A DNA stretch of 64,000 nt from Vitrella brassicaformis CCMP3155 (lineage: Eukaryota > Protista > Chromerida). The notes beneath the pieces are model-generated. The model was not told where the DNA came from and ran no database searches. It saw only the letters and a list, made by a program, of their open reading frames with translations. The translations under genes were made by a program, and so were the position numbers. Position 1 is the first letter of the stretch, and each line of letters begins with the position of its first letter. Shown here one piece after another: positions 314 through 63,584 of this stretch. The DNA lies in NCBI GenBank assembly GCA_001179505.1, contig CDMY01000457.1:1-64000 (forward strand). The letters run 5' to 3'.

Positions 314-3300
314 TCACGACAGAATGGCGTTGGTCCAGCCGTCGAAGGGTTGCCGACACAGCGGGCACTCGGGGGGCTGCAGGTTCTGCACACATTGCTG
401 GCACACGCAGAAGTGGCCGCACGGCTGCAAAACCACCGATCTCTCCTGGGCGAGGCACACTTGGCAGTCGGTGCGCTCCTCCATCTGCCGCTGCATCTGC
501 TCGCGGAACTCGGCCTGCTGCCTCTCGTGGGCCCTCTGTTGAGCTCTGGCGATGAGCGACTGCAGCTGCGGCAGCTCTGTGGTGGTGATGGCCGTCTGCC
601 GGTCGATCAGCTGCATAGCAAAGCCGCTGAGATCGTCCGCAGTGGTCAGCCCTTGGAAGGTCTCACTCAACCTGAATGACACACCGACCAAAGCACAGGT
701 GGTGCCTACCTTGAGAGGTGTGCCATTGCTCTGTGAGTGGGTACGTACCTGTCGATGTGATTGCTGCGGAGCTGGTCAATGTCAGCCTGCAGCGACCCGA
801 CGCTAGCTTGGAGGCTGGCGCACACAGGCAGCAGAACCAAACAGGGTCTGTAGGTCTGTGCAGGTTGTGTCAGCTGCCTGTCCCATACATACCTGGCGAT
901 CTCCTGCCCTTGGGATGCAGTTTCCTGTCTCAGCGAGGTATTTTCCTGCCTCAGTGACGTCTCCCTTTGAGCAGCGGCCCTGACACAAAATGAAGGAATG
1001 AAAAAAAAACCGGTGTGTAAGTGTTGCACCGGGTTAGTACCTCTTGGCTTGCTCGATGTGCCGCTGCATCTCGGTGACCTGCTGCTGACGGGCAGACCTC
1101 TCGCGATCAATAGCGCTGAGCAGGCCAGCAGCACAGCTGGACATGGCCTTGTGTGCGTCCTGTGGCTAGTGTAGGTAGACACCTGGTGAGTCGCTGGTGC
1201 TGTTGGCTGAGCTGCTGGCGGTAGACCTCATTGGCCTTCTTCATATCGGCCTGGAGCCGCTCGTTGGCCGCGAGAGTGTCGGCGACAGTCTGCTCGCCGG
1301 CCGCCTGAGCCTCACGCAAACTGCACACAGCAACGAAGAAGGGCACAGTCAGCTGGATGGATGAATGTGGTGATGCATTATGTACCGCTCGATCTCCTGA
1401 CGGGCGGCATGAGTCTCCTGCTGGAGAGCATGAAACTGTTGCTGAAGGGCGGCCTCCCTCTCCATCGACTCATGCCTGCAGCCGGATAACACAACCACAG
1501 CGGTGAGTCCTTGCTTTTCTTTCTTGTGTTTCCTCTCACCTCGACGCTTCGCTTTGCCGGTCTCTGCGCATCAACTCAGCCTCGAGCTCAGCAATCCTGA
1601 CAAGACCAGATACACCATCACTGTGTGACCAGACACTTCCAGCAATCGCCTCACCTGGCCCGCAGCGCCTCAGTCTCGTCTCCGCCACTCACACGACCGT
1701 CGTCACGACGCCCCGCCGCCCGTCCATCGGTCTCTTCAGCCCCCTGGCCAGTCAGACGCCAGTCACCACCGCCACCATGCCCACTCGCACCATCAATCGA
1801 CAGAAGGTCGTCAACTTCACGCCCACCACCGGGCAGCGGGGGCATGGAGGCGGTCGTCAGAGGAAGCAGCGGCCCACTGGCAGCGCTTACGGCGGCAGCA
1901 GAACCGGCAGCGACAGCAGCGAGGAGACGGGCAGGCTCGAGACCGTCATCCCTCTCCTCTCCCTCCCCCTCACGCACCGATGGGCTGCTGTCTGCCGGGA
2001 GAGATGGCCCTGCTGCGGCCGACGGGAGAGGGCCAGACAATGCAGCAGGGGCGTTCGATGGTGTCTTGTTCTTGCGTCGTTTTTTCTTCTTGGCCTTCTT
2101 GCCGCCCTCGCCCCCCTCCTGCCCGCCCCCATGCTGCTGCTGCTGGTCGTCATCGCTGGAGAACTCCACACCGAGCTCTTTTCGGGCTGCGCGAGCACGC
2201 GCCTCGGCCCGCTTCAGCCGCTCCTGTGCTCTCACGTCGTCCTTGGGCGGCTGGTCGCCTCTCTTCTTGTCCTTTTCGGCCATGCGGGCGGCCTTCTGCT
2301 GCATCATATCGTGTTTGTGGCGCAGCTCGTCGCCCTTGTTCTCGAGACGGATGCGCTTGTTCTCGAGGCGGATCTTGATCTTGTCGATGTCGATGCGATG
2401 GTCGTCCGGATGGGAATCAGGAGACATACCAGCAATGGCCCTCTGAAGCGGCTCTGAAAGAGAAGAGAAGGCAGAGGCTGTCGGCAATGTAGGTAGACGT
2501 ATTTGTTGGCGATCTCACTAACCGATCTCCTTCAGGAGCGTGCCCTTGGCAGCGTTGTTCCTGTTGATCTGCTCGGTGAGGCTGGTGATCTGGCGGTCGA
2601 TGTCCTTCTTGTCGGCCTTGGACGCGGCCGCCTTCTGGGCCCTCAGGTCGCTGACCTTGGTCTGCAGTGTCGACAGCAGGTTCTCGATGACGGCAAGCCG
2701 CTTCTGCTTCTCCTGCAGTGCCTGCCTTAAGAATGCAACAATGACAACAAAGCAGATGCCAGTCGGTCCGCCACTGCGCGCCTTTTCGTACTTGTGTCTG
2801 CGCGATCTCGTCCTCTCCGTGAGGTGTGGGCCGTTGCTGCCCCGGCAGCCTGGTGGCTTCTGCACAAAACACATCTCATATACATAGTTTCCACCATCCA
2901 ACGCACCCTCACTCACCGTTGAGGGCGGCGCGTGCGACGTCGACGTCCTCTTGGGTGATGTTGCTGATGGCAGGGTCGTTCTTGAGGGCCTCGAGCTGGT
3001 CGACACAGTCGCGATATCGAGTGACTGAGACGTTTTCGGAAGCGCTATCCGCTTTGGAGTCTTGGGAGAGGCGGGACAGGCTGTCGAGATAAAGTTGCAG
3101 CAACGGGCCCTACTCGTGACCGTCTGCCACCACGCCAGAGGGGCAGAGGCGTCATAGCAACTCGCAAAGGCGACCAGCAGACGCCGTTGTACATCGAGCA
3201 AATGCGATGAGCGCGACAAACAGACCAAGGCACCTGCACAGGTGCATAGACGGTCACACAGGTGCTCGCAGAGGTAGAATAGTACCCCGGCCAGTTGCGC

Positions 3301-16134: not shown

Positions 16135-16434
16135 NNNNNNNNNNNNNNNNNNNNNNNNNNNNNNNNNNNNNNNNNNNNNNNNNNNNNNNNNNNNNNNNNN
16201 NNNNNNNNNNNNNNNNNNNNNNNNNNNNNNNNNNNNNNNNNNNNNNNNNNNNNNNNNNNNNNNNNNNNNNNNNNNNNNNNNNNNNNNNNNNNNNNNNNNN
16301 NNNNNNNNNNNNNNNNNNNNNNNNNNNNNNNNNNNNNNNNNNNNNNNNNNNNNNNNNNNNNNNNNNNNNNNNNNNNNNNNNNNNNNNNNNNNNNNNNNNN
16401 NNNNNNNNNNNNNNNNNNNNNNNNNNNNNNNNNN
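16135..16434. other. Assembly gap (300 N) with the same 23-mer on both flanks
   Basis: ggggtgggtcgtgagtgggggtt at 16112-16134 and 16435-16457. Confidence 0.95.
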
Positions 16435-53800: not shown

Positions 53801-55484
53801 AGATGTGCGTTATAACGTTTGCTGACCTCAACACGATCCACCATGGTGTTGATCAGGGCTGCGCAGCTCTCTACGACAAATGACCCGCACATGTCATCCT
53901 TGGTCAATCTGTCATTCTGCAGAATGGCCATCGCTCCCGACAGGAAGGCCGTTTGCGATAACTTCTCCTTGTGGCCCACATCTGGACATGTGCACACACA
54001 CACACACACACACGACATCAAGAAGGCAATATATGGGACGGACCATCAACAATCATATGATGCTCACCAGCCATCGCCAATGCCGGTGTCAGACACCACC
54101 AGACCTCCATAGGGCTCCAATCGCAGGGGGCATGCTCATGCAGTGCGGCACCCATCTTGCTCAAGGCAGCAGGACGCGCTAAGACACTGCGACACATCGA
54201 CACCAACGCTACACACACAGAGACACACAACTTTCTCGGGTCTCTCCATACACTGGTCCAGTTCCATGTGTCGCGCACTTGAATGACAGCATAAGCGGCG
54301 GTGCGCGCCAATGAAGACGCCGCCCAACAGCCGAGACGTCCTCGATACGACCAGGCGATCGCTGCTGACTGCAACAGTCTCAGCGAGCGAGTCGATGTGG
54401 CTCAGAATGTGCTGCCGCAATGCCTCCCTCAGATGATCCAGAGACATTCCTGAGCGATGCACAGGCACACACACAGACAAGTGAAAGACGGCAAGACGCT
54501 TGCCCGCCCACCCATATGACCACCCACCTGCGGCCATCCAGCCGTACATTGCATAAAGAGCTGCATCGAAGACCTGGTCCGCTAGTGTCCGCCTCTGCAT
54601 CGCTGCGTCCGCCAGAAGACTAAACAGCGGCCGCCATCCCGCGCCAAATCCATACCCAGATCGAAAAAGCCACCCAAGGAAGGACGCCGCTGCTGCTTGG
54701 TGCGATGGCTCATTATCGGCGAGAAGGAGGCCAACCGCTCTGTCGGCAAGGGACGGCTCTGACCCCTGTGTGGGGGCTGCCTTCTTCCTGACTAGCGACT
54801 GCCGAAATTGAACGTATAACGGATGACCAGCGGGCAGAGGGGCCACTTCTTCTCGGATCTTGTCAACATGGTCGACGAACACATCGACCTCCCCACGAGC
54901 CAGAGCGTCAAGGGCGGCTTCCATTGATGAAACAACCGCAGAGCGCTGAGATGCTGCCCCCTCTGCACCACCAGATGTTCTCACGCCGATGGGGGATGGA
55001 GCTGCGGACCGCGGCTCAGCTTCGTCGAATAGCCGCGGGCTGCTGTGCCGGTCTGCATCATGTCTGTCAGCCACTCCCTCGCTGTGAGAAGACGCCGCTA
55101 CACATGCTACGGTAGCATCACGAGCGGAGCACAGGCTGGCAGCAGCAGACTCAACGACTGACGGATCGATAGCTGCCGATGGGTGCAGAGCTGGCACTTT
55201 ATCATCCGAAGAGGAGGCCAGCACGCCGTCGATTGTGCATCCAGAGCCCGAGCGGGCCTGCCGCGCGTTGGCTTTGGGTTGCTTCTTGGGTGGAGCGGGG
55301 GCGGGGACGGAGGGAGGGGGCGGGTGGGAGGGACTCTCGGACGGCTGCTGCTCTGATGCCGCTGCTGCGACCATTGGCGATGGGTTGATGCTGCTGGTGA
55401 GGTCGACGGCTTGCTGGTGCTGCTTCTGCATCAATGAGGAAGTACTGGAATCAACAGACGTAGAAGGGAACTGATCCTGAAAAT

Positions 55485-55530
<46 letters not shown>

Positions 55531-56132
55531 CCTCACAGGCATCCTTGGGTGCACTCCTGCCTTCGTGGCTGTCTGTATACCGGTGTGGTGTCGACAATGG
55601 CATCTGAATCATCTACAGGCCCACCGCCATGTCTCGCCCCCTCCATCATCCCAGGACAGCCTCCCTGCTGCTGCATCGCCACGCCGCACACGGCTGGTGG
55701 TGAGGATATGGGGCAGAGTCGCATAGACTGCGCATGACGGGCACATGGCCGCTGGTGTCGCTGCTGGTGGTGGTCCTGATGTGTGTCGATGGCCTCACTG
55801 AGGAGCACCTCTGTGAGCACCTCCGAGCAGAGCTGCCGCGACTCAGCTTCGTCGAAGAGCTGTGGGCCGCCGTCAGTCGCAAGGGTGCTCTCTTGGCGGG
55901 GAGATCCTCCTGCTGGTTGGGCAGACGACGCACTAACTGCACCGACACCAAGGTCGCTCCCAGACGATTCATCGCCGCGCCGCTCACTCCCACCAGATCC
56001 CTCCTCTGCCGACGTGCCCTTCATATGCATGTGTTGCTGTTGCTGTGGTTGCTTCTGTTGGTTCGCGGACGTGTGGTCGGGGCTGCGGTCTGCCGCCGTG
56101 TCGCTGAAGGCCAGCCCTTCTTCGGCCTCCAT
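47891..56132 (-). CDS. Multi-exon LRR-like/coiled-coil/RING-HC putative E3 ligase, copy 2
   Basis: RING CQVCQETERSVVLQPCGHFCICQQCAQNLNPPECPLC. LRR-like LPSLEVLNLAQGKM. ATG 56132 (MEAEEGLA). Exon-by-exon colinear with 314-8235. Confidence 0.8.
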
Positions 56133-57699
56133 GGACACAAGCGCTCAGTCGACTATCTACCTGAATGAGTCAGCGCCAAAACAGACACACACGATAGAAG
56201 CACAGGTTCATGGTCCTTGTTTCACGCGCCGCACTTACAGTGAGCCTTGGCGGCCGTCAATTGGAAGATCTCGGACACAATCCGTCAGAAGGCAACCACC
56301 ACAGCTGCGCAAAGGCACTTCTGCGCAGGAATTCACCTGGCAAAAAGCTCGCATTTCGGGCTCTTTCGGTGCCGAAGCAATATTGACCCGAAGCGATCAT
56401 ATGCCCATTCATTCGTTCCGGACTGCAGTCTTTGTCAATGTTCCCTCTGCATCATGTTCCCATATCGATCAACCAGACGGACAGACAGACAGTCACCCAT
56501 GTGTGGTTGCTGTGAGTCAAATACCTCTGCGAGACTGATTGAGTCGAGTGCCAGAGCTTCTCCTGCACCGACTCAATCAGACCTGCAGCAGTACCGGACT
56601 CACGGCAATCTGCATGAGCGGAAAAAGCAAACGGTCCTTTCCATCCCTTCCTCCCATGACACGACGACAGGCAGCCAACACGAGAGTCCATCCAATGCCC
56701 TTGCTTGCTCGGGTGCATCCCTCCCTCCCTGTCCGCGTGTGTGTTGTGTAGTTAGTGTACAAGAGATCCGACCAGCCGAAAGGGAAGCCCGCGAATACAG
56801 AAATGGGTAGTGGTCTCCCCTTCCGTCTCACTCAGTCGCGCCTCGTGCGTGGGTCTTAAATACACCTACCTGGTCTCTCTCTCTCTCTCTCTCCAGTCAG
56901 CGCATCACATCCATGCAGCCATCCATGCGTGGCAGCACTCGACGGATGGATGACTAATTACACGACAGGCATACACGACGCCATCTGACCTTCCCTCCCC
57001 GCCCCTGCTCGTCGCCGCAATAGCAGCCTATGTGTATACGGCACGCAAAAATCAAGGCGACTGGAACCAAATCGAACAGCCAGCCAGAAGTATATAGCAT
57101 TTATCCAGTCAGGCAATTCATTTCCATACGTGTGCATCAACCGGAATAGGATGGTCTCGCCGACCGCGCCCATAGTGACTGGGCTGCCCACGTCACCTCC
57201 CTGTGAAGCTGGTCGGCATCACAGGGGTCACGTCGGCTACTCCGTTCACACAGCCACGCTCGGCGAGCCATGTTCCGTCAAACGTCACACAATGGATCGA
57301 CCAGAGAAGCAACACAACAGACAGTGGCACTTGTGACACGACCTCCTCGCCCGCTTCAAAGGCACCCTTAGAAGCCCGCAGCACCGCGCACGTGTATGTA
57401 TGTATGTACACCTGTCTCTCTCCATCCATCCATCCACGTGCGCCAAGGCAACAGAAAAGCAAAAAGCATATGGTGCAGGCAGCTGGTAATAGTGAGCGGA
57501 GGAGGCCAAGAAAAACGACGAGTGTGCACGCGTCTCAGCGAAAACTAACAGACCCCATCACATCCATCCATCCATCCAGTCATCCAATCGACCTACGATC
57601 CGCCAGCCCCTCTGTCTCTTGTCTACACTACATCACCCCACCCACCCTCCCATCGTCCATCCGAGTGACTATCTATCAATCAATCAGCTAGCTGGTCAG

Positions 57700-60600
57700 T
57701 CAGGCGTCCTCCTCTGCGCCGCCCGCCTCCGCCCCCCCTGCGGCCGGTAGGTTGCCGCTCGCCAGGGGCTGTGGCTGCTCGTAGATGAGGAAGTCGTCGG
57801 CCTTGTCCTCGCTCGGCGCCACCAGCATCCGCACCAGGTGCTTCTCGTGCAGCGAGAACAGCAGCACCTGCGGCAGCTGCTCGGCGTTGTTGAGCAGCTC
57901 CGTCTTGGCCCACGGCTCCACTATGTCGCCCCTGCACGCACGCCACTGCTGCGGCTTGTGTGTCTGGTTGATGGCGTTGGTCTCGGGCTCGTCTACTGCA
58001 CGGGTGTAGGTGATGAGGTCGTACTTCTGATGCGACTCGCCTGTCGCCTGGATCACCACGTCACCAGACGGCAGGCTGCCGTCGGGCGCGTCGGCGTGGC
58101 TCTTGGCCACCAGCCCCATCAGCACTGCAACGAATAAGGACATCACACACCACACAGTAGATGTAGACTGCATGGCGACCCGACCCGACCCACCCCCAAT
58201 GGATTGTCTGTCGTGTGTCAGTCAAGTGGCGCACTCACTCACCGTATTGCGGGTCGTGGTCTAGGTGCATGCGTGCGCATTTCGTGGACATCCACTCGGG
58301 CGGGACGGTGATGACCTCGTCCATGATGACACGACGGACGCCGCTCTCGGGCCAGGAGAGGAACACAAACCACCACGGGGGCAAGTTGCCCAACTGATCC
58401 ACACACAACACAACACGACACATGGCATGCCTATCACCCTTCCTAATTCCCTCCCTCCCCGTCCCTGCCCTCTGTGCCCCACTCACTGACTCACCTCTGC
58501 TGGAACGCCTTTCTTGTGTTTGGGTGGCTGGACGCCGTACACCTTGAGCTCGCCCGCGAAGGCCTTCTTGAGGATGTCGAGGAGCTTGATGTCCTCCGCG
58601 CCGCCGAGGCTCTTGATGTCGTCGTCGGTGATGATGATCTCAGTGTAGAAGTTGAGGTGCATCAGCCGCTCGGGCTTGTTGATCGCCTCGTTGAACGTGC
58701 CCGGCTCGACTAACGTAACGCTGAACATCCGACGCAACGCTGAGTCCTCTGAATGACATACACATACAGACAGAACGAGCAGAGAGACACCCATGTCATG
58801 CGTGTGTCCTGTGCCATCTCCCCCNNNNNNNNNNNNNNNNNNNNNNNNNNNNNNNNNNNNNNNNNNNNNNNNNNNNNNNNNNNNNNNNNNNNNNNNNNNN
58901 NNNNNNNNNNNNNNNNNNNNNNNNNNNNNNNNNNNNNNNNNNNNNNNNNNNNNNNNNNNNNNNNNNNNNNNNNNNNNNNNNNNNNNNNNNNNNNNNNNNN
59001 NNNNNNNNNNNNNNNNNNNNNNNNNNNNNNNNNNNNNNNNNNNNNNNNNNNNNNNNNNNNNNNNNNNNNNNNNNNNNNNNNNNNNNNNNNNNNNNNNNNN
59101 NNNNNNNNNNNNNNNNNNNNNNNNACCCACTCTCTCTCTCTCTCTCTCTCCTGTCCCCTGACCGACCGTTGTGTAGCTGCCCGCCCTTGAAGTCGGCGGC
59201 CTGCTTCTCCAACACACTCCGGTGCTTGACCCAGCGCATCTCCTCGTGCAGCCCACGCAACAGGAAGTCGCACATCTGCCGCAGCTGGGTGCGCACGCCG
59301 AGCTGGTCGCCGCCCAGGATGCCGTCGAGCGAGCGGAACTCTTGGGAGAGGTTGTAGCCCTGGTCGGTCTTCTTGCTGTTGACGAGGAACTGCTTGGCCA
59401 CACGCGCCATGGTGGAGGTGAAGGGGCGGTTCAGGGGATCCGCATGGCAGTTGCTGATGTACTGCACACAGACAGACATCCATCCATCCACAGGCACATG
59501 AATGCATGTGTGTGTGTGTGTGACTGACCTGCATGAGGGCGTTGCACCGGAGGAAGAGCGGCAGCAGGGCGTTGAATGCCTCGGGCGTCTGGTCGGTGGG
59601 GCCGGCGGTGGCGAGGGGCCGCATGGCAGTGTTGAGACGCAACTCGGCCTTCTTGACTACTTGGGCGTACTCGGGCTTCTGCACCACACGAACAGACAAA
59701 GCGACAGAGAGTCAGACACTCGTACGTATGTGTATGAAAGTGTGTGTGGGTGTCGTCAACTCACGTCAGAAGCCGCGGCAGCCTTGGCAATCTCGATGTC
59801 GTCTGAAACACACAACACAACACAACACATACACTCCAACATCCATCGAATGCCGCCCACCTTCCCCCCTCCCTCCCTCGTTGACTCACCGCAGTCGGGC
59901 TTGATGAATGCCGGAGGCAGGAGGTGTTTCTGCTGGGCCTCGTACAACAGGTAGGCCGTCATGGGTGTACCGCTGACGTCCCCCTTGCCACGCTGGTGGT
60001 CCTGGCCGCTGCCATGCTGCACGGGCACATACACCTTTTGCGGCTGTGGGCGCGGCGCCTGGTCCGCCCCCGTGTCGGGAGGGGTGGACCCAGGTGCCGC
60101 TAGGCCACCGTCGCGCTCCTGCTGGGCCTGCTGCTGCTGCTGGGCATGATGCTTGCCGTGCGCCTGGTGTGCTGGATGGTGCTGGGGGTGGTGTGCGTGG
60201 GGCGGGTGATGGTCTCTGCCGTGTCCATGAGCGTGGCCGCCGTGCGCGTGTGCCCCGCGGCCATGTCCGTGGCCATGGGGATGGGGAGCCGTCGGGCCAT
60301 GGCCGTGGGCGTGTGGAAACCCACCTCGACCTAACATGACACAGGACGCACACGGACGACCCATTGACAGAGGACCAGAGTGGGTGTGTGGCGTGTCCGC
60401 CTGTGTGCGTACCTCCGCCGCCGCCCCGTCCCGGCCTGTGTGGGCCCCCACCGCCCCGGCCCATCCGGAACTCGTGTGGGTGTCCTGTGGGTGAGCCGCC
60501 GCCGTTGCTGCCGGGGCTGGAGCCGTTGTGCTTGCTGCCCCACTCCTGGAGGGAGCTCTCCTGGATGATCGACTTGCGGTTGGGTTTGAACTCGACCTGC

Positions 60601-63338
60601 TGCTCCCAGAAGTTAAACTGACCACACACACACACACACACATGGACGTATGAGCGTGTGTGTGGCTAGTTGGGGGTGGGGGTGTGGGGGGTGAGGTGGG
60701 GGTGTACCCTGTGTCCGCTTCTGGATCTGTGCAGGAGGTAGATGGCGGCGTCGTAGGTGCTCATGGTGACGTAGCCAGTGTGGCACGGCTGGTTCCACCC
60801 CGAGTGCCCGTTGGGGTTCGTCTGCATACGCTTAACATGACCAAAATCTAGCCACACAAACAATCAGGGAGAGACGAGCAATGAGAACAGGTGCCGCCTT
60901 GGGTGCGTCTGCATGTGTTCCGCTTGTTGCCGGCGCGTACCGTCGGCCCACTTCTGTATTTCGTTTGCGAAGGCGTTGCGCATCTCCAGGTGCTCGCGGT
61001 CCTCCTCCGGCACGAACGAACACCAGACGGTGCGATCCTCCTCTGCAGACCGCACACGTAAAGACATGCCGCTTTCTCATCGTGTGCGTTGATTTGTGTG
61101 TGTGGACAAGGGCGTGTGCGCGTACCAGTAGGGTTCTTCTTGCGCGCCGCGATCTCCTCCTCGTTGGCTGAGGGAACGAAGCGCCCTCACACACATACAC
61201 CGCAGATAGAGAGATGTGGATGCGCGTGTGTGGGTGTGCTATGTACTCAACATTCATCCACCCATCCCACGTGTGCGTACGTTTGTGTGGGGCGGGTGCG
61301 GTTCTTTCGCTAACTAGCTCTATGATCTCGCGCAGCACGTCGGTGCGCTTCTGGAAGTCGTCGTAGTCCTCCAACTGCACAGACCTGAACACATCACCCA
61401 CCCCACGCGCCCACATATCAAACACGTCTGAGAAGCATGGCCTCCCTCCCTCCCTCCCTCCCTCCCTCCCCCCTCTCTCATCGCTCGGCTACTCACCCCC
61501 AGTGTCCCGTTTTGCCTCTGTAGTCGTTGCCGTGCACAGACATCTTGCCCTTGCGGGCGAGCTGCTGCTTCATGACCGTAAGCTTGGTCAGCGTGTGGCT
61601 CGGCACGAGCATCGACGACCACTGCTCGTGGTACCCCTGCTCACGGCAATACTCCAACATCAACCTACTCACACAGGAAGACCACATCCATCCACGGGGG
61701 TGTACGTGTGTGTCTTGGTGTGCCGGTGTGTGTGGCAACTGACACTATGGATCCCATGAGGGTGTCTTTGACGTCATTGTCCTTGTTGGTGGCGCCAAAG
61801 ACGACGATGGCGCTGTTGCCGGAGTCCTGTTTCTCCTCTACGCCGAAGAGTGCGGCAGGGTTCTTGACGAGGCAGTACCGGAGGCAGCCCGAGCGGTGCA
61901 TGCTCGACACCGTGTCCTTGGTGTAGAACTCCACCGCCTTGGCCGTCATGACGTCCACCATCAGGAATATCGCATACAGCGGCTGGCGCAACATCTCCTC
62001 TATGCTCAGAGACTGACGCATACACACGACACACACCAACACAGTGCAAGAACGGATTGCCCGTCATGGATTCCATGGATGTGTGTGTGCACGCGTACCT
62101 TGGCCCCACTCGCCTCCCGACCAGCCGCACTGTTCTGCAACGCGATGGCGTCAGGCACGTCGCCACCCACTATCAGTGCCTCGATGGTGGCGCGCGACTC
62201 GGGATCCATTGTGGGGTCGTCCAGCGCCTTCAAGTAAGTGGCGCGGTCGCCAGCAACAGCCGACGACGCGTGGGTCGATGGCGTGGGTGGTGGCGGGTGA
62301 GCGGGCTTGGGAGGCGGTAGGAACGCCCCCTGCTGCTGCTGTTGTTGCTGCTGTTGCTGCTGTTTGGCTGGTGCGGGGGGTGGGTGAGCGGGGCGGTTGT
62401 TCGGGACGATGCTGGTGGGTGTCGCAACCTCGTCAACGCCTGAACATAACACAACATACAATACAACACAAACATCACACAACACGATGATGTTGACCGC
62501 GTTGGGCTGCGTTTCCGAGCTTCTGACCTCGCTTGACCCCCGTGGGTGGCTGGGGTGGCGGGTGTGAGGGAGGGGGCTGGATGTTGGGCACACTGGGTGC
62601 CTGCTGCTGGGGGGGCTGCAGCTGCTGTTGCTGTTGCTGCTGTTGTGGTGGCTGACGGGGTGTGGGTGCGGGGACCTTGGGGAGCACTGGGTGAGAGGCA
62701 CCCGCCTTGGCTACTGGGTTGATCGATGCACCTTCCTGCACACACGACACCACATGGAGGGTGATTCGCATCCCACATCCATTTATGTGTTCACCCACCC
62801 CCCCACTCACCTTTCTGAAAACGATCTGCATGAGTTGGTCCACCTTCCTATCCACCTCCCCCAGCCGCTTGTCCATCCCACGCACACACCCCTCAACCAC
62901 ACGACGAATGGCCTCCTCCAGCTCGGGCAGCGTCATCGTCCCCACAATCCCGCTCGATGGGCTGCTGGTGACGCTCGCATGGTGCCCCTTGCGGCCGTTG
63001 CTGCCGGCTGGAGGGGTGAAGGCGGCCTCTCCGTTGAGGTCGGCGTAGGGGCTCTGCCGCTGGTCGGTCCCGACATGGTACTGCTGCTGCTGCTGTGCTG
63101 CCTGCTCCTGCTGCTGGTCGGGGTAGACGTCGCCGTACTCGGGCGGCTGCCGCTGCTGTTGCGCGTAGTACTGCAGGTAGTCGGCGTCATACGCGTTGCC
63201 GTGTGCCTGTCCGTGAGAGGAGGGCGTGAATGGGGCGGCTTCGCTGTTCATGCAGTGGCCGCTGTCGTCATTGGAGGTGGTACGGTGGCCCTGATAGCCG
63301 TGGTCATATGCGCCGTATGACCCAGAATAGGGATCCAT
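57700..63338 (-). CDS. 17-exon protein: PAM2-like motifs, Q/P-rich regions, divergent RRM, RGG/His-rich region, catalytically inactive USP-like domain
   Basis: All traced GT-AG joins keep frame; one intron contains the N gap. RRM: DRTVWCSFVP...DFGHVKRM...TGYVTMSTYDAAIYLL...QQVEFKP. USP-like boxes: AFNALLPLFL, DFLLRGLHEEM, SALRRMFSV, LPPWWFVFL, YDLITY, WRACRGDIV, QVLLFS. Confidence 0.75.
58825..59124. other. Assembly gap (300 N) inside an intron of the pseudo-USP gene
   Basis: N run next to a (CT)n tract. Confidence 0.95.
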
Positions 63339-63584
63339 CTTGTGCGCGCTTGCGCCGAAAGGGGAGATGTGGCAAAACCAGAGGCGAAACGGGCGCTGAG
63401 CTACATGAAAACTGCCGAAATGCGTCTAATCCTCCCCTCGACGAGCTCCTGCGAGCTTGAAGCCAAAAGAGGAGTGGTTTTTCGTTGCTGAGGTTTAGAT
63501 GGAGGTGAAGTTTGGAGCATAGTGGACATCACAGCGTCCTCACAGCGTAGATCTCTCTCACTATCATCCTGGCCGCACCAGATC

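What the first reader, a model, noticed from the sequence alone, without database searches (positions are those of the whole stretch)
57700..63338. Novel architecture: PAM2-like + Q-rich + RRM + RGG + dead USP in one protein
Seen: 17 exons join in frame into a protein with N-terminal PAM2-like motifs, polyQ/Pro regions, an unknown ~150-aa globular block, a divergent RRM split over three exons, RGG boxes, a His-rich tract and a C-terminal USP-like domain. Established: PAM2 binds the PABP MLLE domain; USP10/Ubp3 (PAM2 + active USP) acts in stress granules and ribosome quality control; PAN2 and USP39 are RNA-linked pseudo-USPs. I do not recognise this combination from any described family. Inference: an undescribed mRNP/stress-granule scaffold coupling poly(A)-bound mRNA to ubiquitin sensing, plausibly for translational dormancy in spores or cysts. 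This is the best candidate for a new system in this window.
Basis: partly seen in the sequence, partly recalled or inferred. Interest (0 to 1): 0.8.

Follow-up and report, generated by a model that had tools for sequence, protein, structure and literature searches.

The report
Orphan RNA-binding-like protein, USP unproven
This is a real, transcribed 17-exon gene of the alga Vitrella brassicaformis for a 1286-residue protein with no detectable relatives. It looks like an mRNA-particle scaffold, but the claimed dead deubiquitinase domain could not be demonstrated.

Summary
The gene model is confirmed. Seventeen GT-AG exons on the minus strand (63338 to 57700) join in frame to 1286 codons. Two spliced transcript contigs carry every junction. 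The public record CEM14755.1 (Vitrella brassicaformis, "unnamed protein product") matches the model exon for exon.

The assembly gap lies wholly inside intron 14. Transcripts join 59167 directly to 58748, and a DNA contig shows about 9 missing letters, not 300.

Read directly from the sequence:
- polyQ and Pro-rich tracts
- three RGG boxes
- a His-rich tract
- one consensus PAM2-like peptide (residues 30-39; present in 0.125% of shuffles)

The RRM has weak but above-noise support. hhalign against a bacterial RRM profile gives P 0.0076 and beats 200 of 200 shuffles, and the best site in the whole protein is the predicted one. Pfam does not call it.

The dead-USP call is not demonstrated. Pfam gives nothing, profile scores equal shuffles, and AlphaFold models were unusable. 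Only language-model neighbours (mostly UCH) and one USP11 hit at E about 1 point that way.

No homologue was found anywhere.

Best reading: a lineage-restricted PABP/RNA-binding scaffold with an unassigned C-terminal domain.

The scan read this same stretch once before (s1-194587), not on other DNA.

The parts
57700..63338 (-). Whole coding region: 17 exons, 1286 codons plus stop. Exons: 63338-62811, 62735-62528, 62439-62099, 62012-61744, 61664-61497, 61384-61281, 61167-61126, 61042-60941, 60847-60708, 60617-60413, 60330-59890, 59802-59765, 59678-59529, 59461-59167, 58748-58495, 58393-58243, 58124-57700.
   Evidence: All introns are GT-AG and the phases close to 3861 nt. Spliced contigs X6 record 13 and X7 record 14 carry the junctions. 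The model is identical exon by exon to CEM14755.1 = P0003.
58825..59124 (.). Assembly gap (300 N), inside intron 14 (59166-58749). True missing length is about 9 nt in a CT/GA microsatellite.
   Evidence: Transcript contigs join 59167 to 58748 directly. DNA contig X3 record 6 has only 44 letters between 58824 and 59160.
63222..63251 (-). PAM2-like peptide 1, residues 30-39 (MNSEAAPFTP). It fits the consensus [LM]N..A..F.P.
   Evidence: This is the only match to the regular expression in the protein. It occurs in 0.125% of 20000 composition-preserving shuffles. The Pfam PAM2 model gave no hit on exon 1.
63009..63038 (-). PAM2-like peptide 2, residues 101-110 (LNGEAAFTPP). It repeats the EAA(P)FTP core, but the Ala-Phe spacing is one residue short of the consensus.
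   Evidence: sequence read directly.
62811..62942 (-). Residues 133-176, a charged heptad-like segment. A helix or coiled coil is my inference from the sequence.
   Evidence: Sequence and composition. No family hit.
62261..62735 (-). Residues 177-305, a Pro/Gln-rich linker (28% P, 20% Q) with Q8 and Q12 runs. It spans intron 2.
61281..62260 (-). Residues 306-540, a block of ordinary (non-repetitive) composition without any recognisable family. It spans introns 3-5.
   Evidence: Pfam gives nothing and the PDB sequence search gives nothing. Atlas feature scores are at most 0.87. The word search and the metagenome scan give nothing.
60570..61042 (-). Residues about 555-650, an RRM-like region over exons 8, 9 and the start of 10. 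The RNP2-like stretch is VWCSFV and the RNP1-like stretch is CHTGYVTM.
   Evidence: hhalign against 93 bacterial RRMs scores 18.3, P 0.0076, and 0 of 200 shuffles reach it. The best site in the whole 1286-aa protein is 581-627, in RRM register. phmmer finds HuR RRM at E 1.5 over 606-648. Pfam RRM_1 is not matched. The AF2 model has pLDDT 39.
60320..60470 (-). Residues 684-706, an RGG/Gly-rich box (RGG at 688, 698, 704). It spans intron 10.
60113..60319 (-). Residues 707-775, a His-rich tract (33% His; HG/HA/HP repeats) ending in a Q run.
57775..59971 (-). Residues 823-1262, a C-terminal block of about 440 aa with ordinary composition (exons 11-17). The USP-like reading is not demonstrated. There is no Cys at either candidate catalytic position (E895 or L905).
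   Evidence: Against: Pfam gives nothing; hhalign and hmmsearch against 50 giant-virus USPs score at shuffle level; the AF2 model has pLDDT 34.6. For: 25 of 30 Atlas feature neighbours are UCH at 0.92-0.93; USP11 is hit at E 0.45-1 on the LHE block; the best local alignments fall in colinear USP motifs at 908-926, 974-988 and 1204-1238.

Best explanation
This is a genuine, expressed Vitrella brassicaformis gene. It encodes a 1286-residue protein with no detectable relatives, and more than a third of it is low-complexity sequence.

The most likely role is a scaffold of cytoplasmic mRNA-protein particles. Each of the following steps is inferred, not shown:
- The N-terminal PAM2-like peptide (residues 30-39, perhaps helped by the related 101-110 copy) docks on the MLLE domain of poly(A)-binding protein.
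- A degenerate RRM (about 555-650) and the adjacent RGG box contact RNA.
- The Gln/Pro/Tyr-rich and His-rich tracts give multivalent, possibly pH- or metal-sensitive, self-association.

The C-terminal block of about 440 residues has no protease catalytic residues at the candidate positions and acts as a non-catalytic interaction module. It may be a highly degenerate USP fold (I put that at roughly 55%), but this is not shown.

Shown: the gene structure, its transcription as one spliced RNA, continuity across the gap, and the composition and motifs.
For: - Gene model and single transcript.
- PAM2 consensus match, rare in shuffles.
- RRM-like signal above all 200 shuffles, in the correct register, and the best-scoring site in the whole protein; HuR lead.
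- RGG, His and Q/P tracts read directly.
- C-terminal block: ordinary composition; Atlas neighbours mostly UCH; USP11 lead; colinear weak motif matches.
- PAM2 plus USP on one chain has a precedent in USP10, which works with the RRM/RGG protein G3BP (PMC4810302, found and cited from its abstract and my own knowledge).
Against: - No Pfam family is matched in the whole protein or its parts, even at E<=10.
- The RRM signal is modest: P 0.0076 for the domain and 0.094 over the full length. hmmsearch with the same RRM set reports nothing.
- USP profile scores are indistinguishable from shuffles: 40 of 150 shuffles score as high or higher, and the block tests are likewise at noise.
- The two alignments put the Cys box in registers about 10 residues apart.
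- Both structure predictions failed.
- With no homologues, nothing is known about which residues are conserved.
- PAM2 is a short motif; a proteome of this size is expected to hold some chance matches.
Confidence: 0.4

Rival explanations
1. One reading: the C-terminal domain is a true catalytically dead USP fold that binds ubiquitin or ubiquitinated ribosomes/mRNPs. The protein would then couple poly(A)-bound mRNA to ubiquitin sensing, in effect a single-chain G3BP-plus-USP10 analogue.
For: - Atlas feature search: 25 of 30 nearest clusters carry UCH.
- USP11 was the only PDB hit for exon 14, in the LHE-block register.
- The best local hits of the USP profile fall in three colinear hallmark blocks.
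- There is no Cys at either candidate catalytic position.
Against: - None of these leads is significant.
- Pfam UCH and UCH_1 are silent.
- hhalign scores equal shuffles.
- The C-terminal half has no PDB hit.
- Structure prediction failed.
- Ubiquitin binding is untested.
Confidence: 0.25
2. None of the domain calls is real. The protein is a fast-evolving, taxon-restricted, largely disordered protein with two novel folded blocks, and the PAM2, RRM and USP resemblances are chance.
For: - No Pfam families are matched.
- No homologues appear among 1.84 billion representatives for exon 17, nor in the word and locus searches.
- Structure models are low confidence.
- USP scores are at noise.
Against: - The RRM profile score exceeds all 200 shuffles and lands on the predicted site.
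- The strict PAM2 pattern occurs in only 0.125% of shuffles, and its core is repeated.
- Two independent detectors pick the same rare family, USP, for the C-terminus.
Confidence: 0.3
3. The protein is an active deubiquitinase with an unusual catalytic site.
For: Cys907 and Cys917 lie near the candidate Cys box, and His residues are present at 1141, 1155, 1177 and 1201.
Against: - There is no GNTC-type Cys box or GHY-type His box.
- The aligned catalytic positions are E895 or L905, and the His-box position aligns to Ser-Gly-Asp.
- There is no Pfam match.
Confidence: 0.03
4. The gene model is an annotation or assembly artefact: two genes fused across the gap, or a non-coding transcript.
For: The 300-N gap interrupts the locus.
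Against: - Single spliced contigs from two samples (two studies; X3 and X7 share one sample) span all exons and join 59167 to 58748 in frame.
- A 3861-nt open frame is kept through 16 introns of mixed phase.
Confidence: 0.02

Closest known systems
USP10 (Ubp3 family) together with its partner G3BP (Bre5)
   Same: USP10 carries a PAM2 motif upstream of a C-terminal USP domain and acts in stress granules and on 40S subunits with G3BP, which supplies an RRM and an RGG region (PMC4810302). This protein has a PAM2-like peptide, an RRM-like region, RGG boxes and a C-terminal block with faint USP-like motifs, all on one chain.
   Different: No sequence homology to USP10 or G3BP was detected. No NTF2-like domain and no FGDF motif were seen. 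The C-terminal block lacks the catalytic Cys and His and is not shown to be a USP at all.
PAN2-PAN3 deadenylase (pseudo-USP plus PAM2)
   Same: It links a catalytically dead USP-type domain (PAN2) with a PAM2-bearing partner (PAN3) on poly(A)/PABP. This description is from my own knowledge.
   Different: This protein has no WD40, no DEDD exonuclease and no pseudokinase. It ends 24 residues after the C-terminal block, and Pfam UCH_1, which covers PAN2, is not matched.
GW182/TNRC6 and ataxin-2 type PABP-docking scaffolds
   Same: They combine Gln-rich low-complexity sequence, a PAM2 motif and (in GW182) a degenerate RRM that Pfam detects poorly. They work as multivalent mRNP scaffolds (PMC3018788, listed).
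   Different: This protein has no GW repeats and no LSm or LSmAD domains. The only Pfam flicker (GW182 M domain, E 0.026, below the cutoff) sits on a Gln/Pro run and is compositional.
USP39/Sad1 (spliceosomal pseudo-USP)
   Same: It is an RNA-machinery protein with an inactive USP domain (from my own knowledge).
   Different: This protein has no ZnF-UBP domain and no detectable similarity to USP39.

Membership tests
USP / peptidase C19 (Pfam UCH PF00443, UCH_1 PF13423) | Profile match to the family model | tested here: not met
   Pfam gives 0 families at E<=10 for P0001, P0003 and P0003:860-1286. An HMM of 50 giant-virus USPs scores -2.9 bits. The hhalign score of 15.9 equals shuffles (40 of 150 score as high or higher).
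USP / peptidase C19 | Cys box with the catalytic Cys (GNTCY-type) | tested here: not met
   No such motif is present. The candidate registers place E895 or L905 at the catalytic position.
USP / peptidase C19 | His box with the catalytic His (GHY-type) | tested here: not met
   There is no GHY. The greedy alignment puts Ser-Gly-Asp 1166-1168 there. That alignment is not itself significant.
USP / peptidase C19 | Palm-thumb-fingers fold | tested here: inconclusive
   The AF2 single-sequence model of 820-1270 has pLDDT 34.6, so no fold search was run. Atlas features favour UCH.
RRM (Pfam RRM_1 PF00076) | Profile match to the family model | tested here: not met
   There is no Pfam hit at E<=10 on the exons, on P0003:540-720 or on P0003. 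hmmsearch with 93 bacterial RRMs reports nothing.
RRM | Beta-alpha-beta-beta-alpha-beta core with RNP2 and RNP1 in register | tested here: inconclusive
   hhalign gives P 0.0076, 0 of 200 shuffles reach the score, and the alignment covers alpha1-beta2-RNP1-alpha2. The best site in the full protein is 581-627. There is a HuR lead at E 1.5. RNP1 keeps only one of its two aromatic residues. The AF2 model has pLDDT 39.4.
PAM2 motif (PABP MLLE ligand) | Consensus hydrophobic3-N4-x-x-A7-x-x-F10-x-P12 | tested here: met
   Residues 30-39 match, and only 0.125% of shuffles contain the pattern. The second copy at 101-110 does not fit the spacing. The Pfam PAM2 model is silent.
PAM2 motif | Binding to an MLLE domain | not testable with these tools
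   This needs pull-down or ITC with Vitrella PABP.
RGG box proteins | Clustered RGG/RG repeats in a Gly-rich tract | tested here: met
   RGG occurs at 688, 698 and 704 within a segment that is 37% Gly.
G3BP family | N-terminal NTF2-like domain | tested here: not met
   There is no Pfam NTF2 hit. Residues 306-540 have no PDB or Atlas lead.
PAN2 | WD40 propeller and C-terminal DEDD exonuclease flanking the pseudo-USP | tested here: not met
   There are no Pfam hits, and the protein ends at residue 1286 just after the block.

The most novel reading that the evidence does not exclude
One polypeptide unites the modules that other eukaryotes split between G3BP (RRM + RGG) and USP10 (PAM2 + USP), with the USP turned into a non-catalytic reader. 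This would be a chromerid-specific single-chain organiser of mRNP condensates that links PABP-bound mRNA to ubiquitin marks.
Probability: 0.22. Interest if true: 0.65.

Novelty: new variant of a known kind. Interest (0 to 1): 0.4.

Why it matters
If the RRM, PAM2 and pseudo-USP readings all hold, this would be an undescribed way of building an mRNP or stress-granule hub in the photosynthetic relatives of apicomplexan parasites. It would also be a natural fusion arguing that PABP docking, RNA binding and a USP-type module belong to one functional unit.

As it stands, the solid results are narrower:
- A validated gene model.
- A resolved assembly gap (about 9 nt, intronic).
- An expressed 1286-aa protein with no detectable relative (exhaustive for exon 17, word-based for the rest). 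Its folded blocks are good targets for structure determination.

Tried and rejected
- Exon-by-exon Pfam scans found nothing.
- Pfam on the full-length database protein and three parts found nothing.
- PDB sequence searches of exon 4, 305-545, 1085-1262 and exon 17 gave no or irrelevant hits.
- An idea that residues 320-350 form a UBA-like helix pair had no support and was dropped.
- Homologue searches: exhaustive phmmer with exon 17 (only itself plus one spurious repeat protein), three word-index searches, two metagenome scans and one viral scan. All were empty.
- AlphaFold2 single-sequence runs on 820-1270 and 548-652 were both below pLDDT 40, so no fold search was run.
- I did not feed AF2 an alignment padded with unrelated USPs, because the result would be circular.
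- A USP profile built from 50 of 94 giant-virus USP ORFs, fetched with a Cys-box DNA pattern, gave no score above shuffles for the whole domain or three blocks.
- Atlas features for 308-540 were all below 0.9.
- Literature searches for the accession, for RRM plus pseudo-DUB architectures, and for Vitrella stress granules found nothing relevant.
Full report
**Gene model**

Reading the minus strand of 57650-63400, I placed 17 exons with GT-AG borders. Their phases close exactly to 3861 nt, which is 1286 codons plus a TGA at 57702-57700. Introns are 67-118 nt, except intron 14, which holds the N run. ATG 63338 is the first in-frame ATG after an upstream stop 29 codons away.

**Gap and single transcript**

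This was the test the scan's program asked to be done first. Public runs that hold the stretch were found, and four were laid on 57700-63338.

- Two runs hold spliced contigs: X6 record 13 (4004 nt) and X7 record 14 (3873 nt). Both cover the locus from 63338 to 57700.
- The joints table lists introns 1-8, 10-13, 15 and 16 exactly at my borders. Intron 9 follows from X1 record 3.
- For intron 14, the piece ending at 59167 occupies contig positions up to 3135 (X6), and the piece starting at 58748 begins at 3136. The two exons therefore abut with nothing between them.
- The gap 58825-59124 is thus wholly intronic, no exon is missing, and the reading frame (1 + 2 bases, codon GAG) is continuous.
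- DNA contig X3 record 6 has 44 letters between 58824 and 59160, where the window has 35 read letters plus 300 N. The true gap is about 9 nt of a CT microsatellite, which makes intron 14 about 127 nt, like its neighbours.
- The runs are not labelled RNA, but contigs lacking all introns can only come from cDNA.

Exons were searched one by one by reference.

- The exhaustive search with exon 17 returned a database protein, P0001, covering the last 483 residues.
- Its 90% cluster holds the full-length public record P0003 = CEM14755.1 / UniRef A0A0G4FMF9, "unnamed protein product", Vitrella brassicaformis CCMP3155, 1286 aa.
- Every one of my exon translations is found in P0003 in order and without gaps other than the split codons.
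- All full-length analyses used that stored record.

**What the sequence shows directly**

| Residues | Feature |
|---|---|
| 1-132 | Q/S/G/A/Y-rich. Contains MNSEAAPFTP at 30-39, which fits the PAM2 consensus (hydrophobic-N-x-x-A-x-x-F-x-P). Contains a related LNGEAAFTPP at 101-110, whose Ala-Phe spacing is one short. |
| 133-176 | Charged, helix-like segment |
| 177-305 | 28% Pro, 20% Gln, with Q8 and Q12 runs |
| 306-540 | Ordinary composition |
| 541-652 | The RRM candidate |
| 653-706 | 37% Gly, with RGG at 688, 698 and 704 |
| 707-775 | 33% His |
| 776-822 | G/P/Q-rich linker |
| 823-1262 | Ordinary composition |
| 1263-1286 | Ala/Gly/Glu tail |

The strict PAM2 pattern occurs in only 0.125% of 20000 shuffles of the protein.

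**Domain tests: family and PDB searches**

- Pfam finds no family in the full protein or in 280-560, 540-720 or 860-1286, even at E<=10.
- PDB sequence searches give only marginal hits.
  - USP11 at E 0.45-1 over the block that ends in FLLRGLHEE. It was the only hit for exon 14.
  - HuR RRM at E 1.5 over 606-648.

**Domain tests: ESM Atlas and structure prediction**

- The ESM Atlas feature search for 820-1286 lists 25 UCH-bearing clusters among 30 neighbours (0.92-0.93). Above them are two unnamed clusters at 0.95 and 0.94. By the tool's own calibration this is a lead, not proof.
- For 308-540 nothing reaches 0.9.
- AlphaFold2 had to run without an alignment because no relatives exist. It gave pLDDT 34.6 for 820-1270 and 39.4 for 548-652. 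No fold search was justified.

**Profiles of my own, with shuffle controls**

I built comparison profiles only from sequences the tools returned.

USP profile:
- A Cys-box DNA pattern pulled 120 giant-virus loci. From these, 94 complete USP ORFs with Cys and His boxes were extracted and thinned to 50.
- hhalign of 860-1286 against this profile scored 15.9, against 14.5 +/- 2.6 for shuffles; 40 of 150 shuffles scored as high or higher.
- hmmsearch gave -2.9 bits.
- Three sub-blocks were also at noise.
- The best local matches do fall on three hallmark USP blocks in colinear order: 908-926 on the tail of the Cys box, 974-988 on the EFL..LHE block, and 1204-1238 on the W..DD.V...Y.LFY block. The last is the best site in the whole protein.
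- This colinearity is not statistically supported.
- The USP11 and profile alignments disagree by about 10 residues on the Cys-box register (E895 versus L905). In neither is a Cys at the catalytic position.

RRM profile:
- An RNP1 pattern pulled 120 bacterial loci, giving 93 non-redundant RRM domains.
- hhalign of 548-652 scored 18.3, P 0.0076. This is above all 200 shuffles (mean 10.8, sd 2.4, max 17.9).
- It aligns 581-629 to helix 1, strand 2, RNP1 and helix 2.
- Scanning the entire protein, the best site is again 581-627, and the three best 105-residue windows all overlap it.
- RNP1 (CHTGYVTM) keeps one of its two aromatic residues. RNP2 (VWCSFV) keeps its aromatic.
- I take the RRM-like call as probable (about 75%) and the USP-like call as open (about 55%).

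**Relatives**

- Exon 17 against 1.84 billion cluster representatives with full HMMER found only itself.
- Word-index searches for 820-1286, 305-660 and P0001 found nothing.
- Metagenome and viral locus scans found nothing.
- The exhaustive search covered only exon 17; the others depend on shared 5-residue words. Very divergent orthologues (for example in Chromera) are therefore not excluded for the other regions.

**Most likely mechanism (inferred)**

The protein most likely acts as an mRNP scaffold.
- It docks on PABP through the PAM2-like peptide.
- It holds RNA through the RRM-like and RGG regions.
- It multimerises through the Q/P/Y and His-rich tracts.
- It presents a non-catalytic C-terminal module.

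The closest functional analogy is the USP10-G3BP pair of stress granules (PMC4810302). PAN2-PAN3, GW182 and USP39 share single aspects. Membership in any of these families fails the tests I could run.

**Novelty and score**

The gene and protein are already in public databases, but uncharacterised. I found no paper naming them.

The architecture, as far as it can be verified (PAM2-like, Q/P, RRM-like, RGG, His-rich, then an unassigned 440-aa block), is a new variant of the known class of low-complexity RNA-binding scaffolds. The striking part of the claim, a dead USP, remains unproven.

Interest is 0.4. It would rise to about 0.65 if a USP fold and PABP or ubiquitin binding were shown.

Noticed in passing
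window 16135-16434: A second 300-N assembly gap lies elsewhere in the window. By analogy with the gap studied here, its stated length may also be a placeholder.
   Followed up: no
window 62736-62810: Intron 1 is 75 nt, in frame and free of stops. Its retention would insert 25 residues without breaking the protein. All spliced contigs seen had it removed.
   Followed up: partly
window 59125-59159, 60615-60652, 61433-61482: Introns carry microsatellites: (CT)n, (CA)n and (GGGA)n-type on the minus strand. Logan contigs break at these sites, and the assembly gap sits on one of them.
   Followed up: partly
window 54139-55608 (minus strand): A 490-codon open stretch downstream of this gene on the same strand is probably part of the neighbouring gene. 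It was not analysed.
   Followed up: no
same genome, other pieces (notes s1-231226, s1-227165, s1-221753): Other first-stage notes in this genome also claim USP domains that have lost Cys and His. If real, Vitrella may have several pseudo-USPs.
   Followed up: no
P0001 (JGI/IMG contig of 1806 nt): The C-terminal 483 residues of this Vitrella protein also exist, 100% identical and correctly spliced, as a JGI/IMG record on a 1.8-kb contig. That is, there is a cDNA-like sequence in a JGI data set. Its sample of origin was not traced.
   Followed up: no
L001-L120 (IMG/VR giant-virus contigs): One Cys-box DNA pattern recovered 94 complete USP-type ORFs of 240-480 aa with intact Cys and His boxes in Nucleocytoviricota-like contigs. 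These small viral deubiquitinases are abundant.
   Followed up: partly
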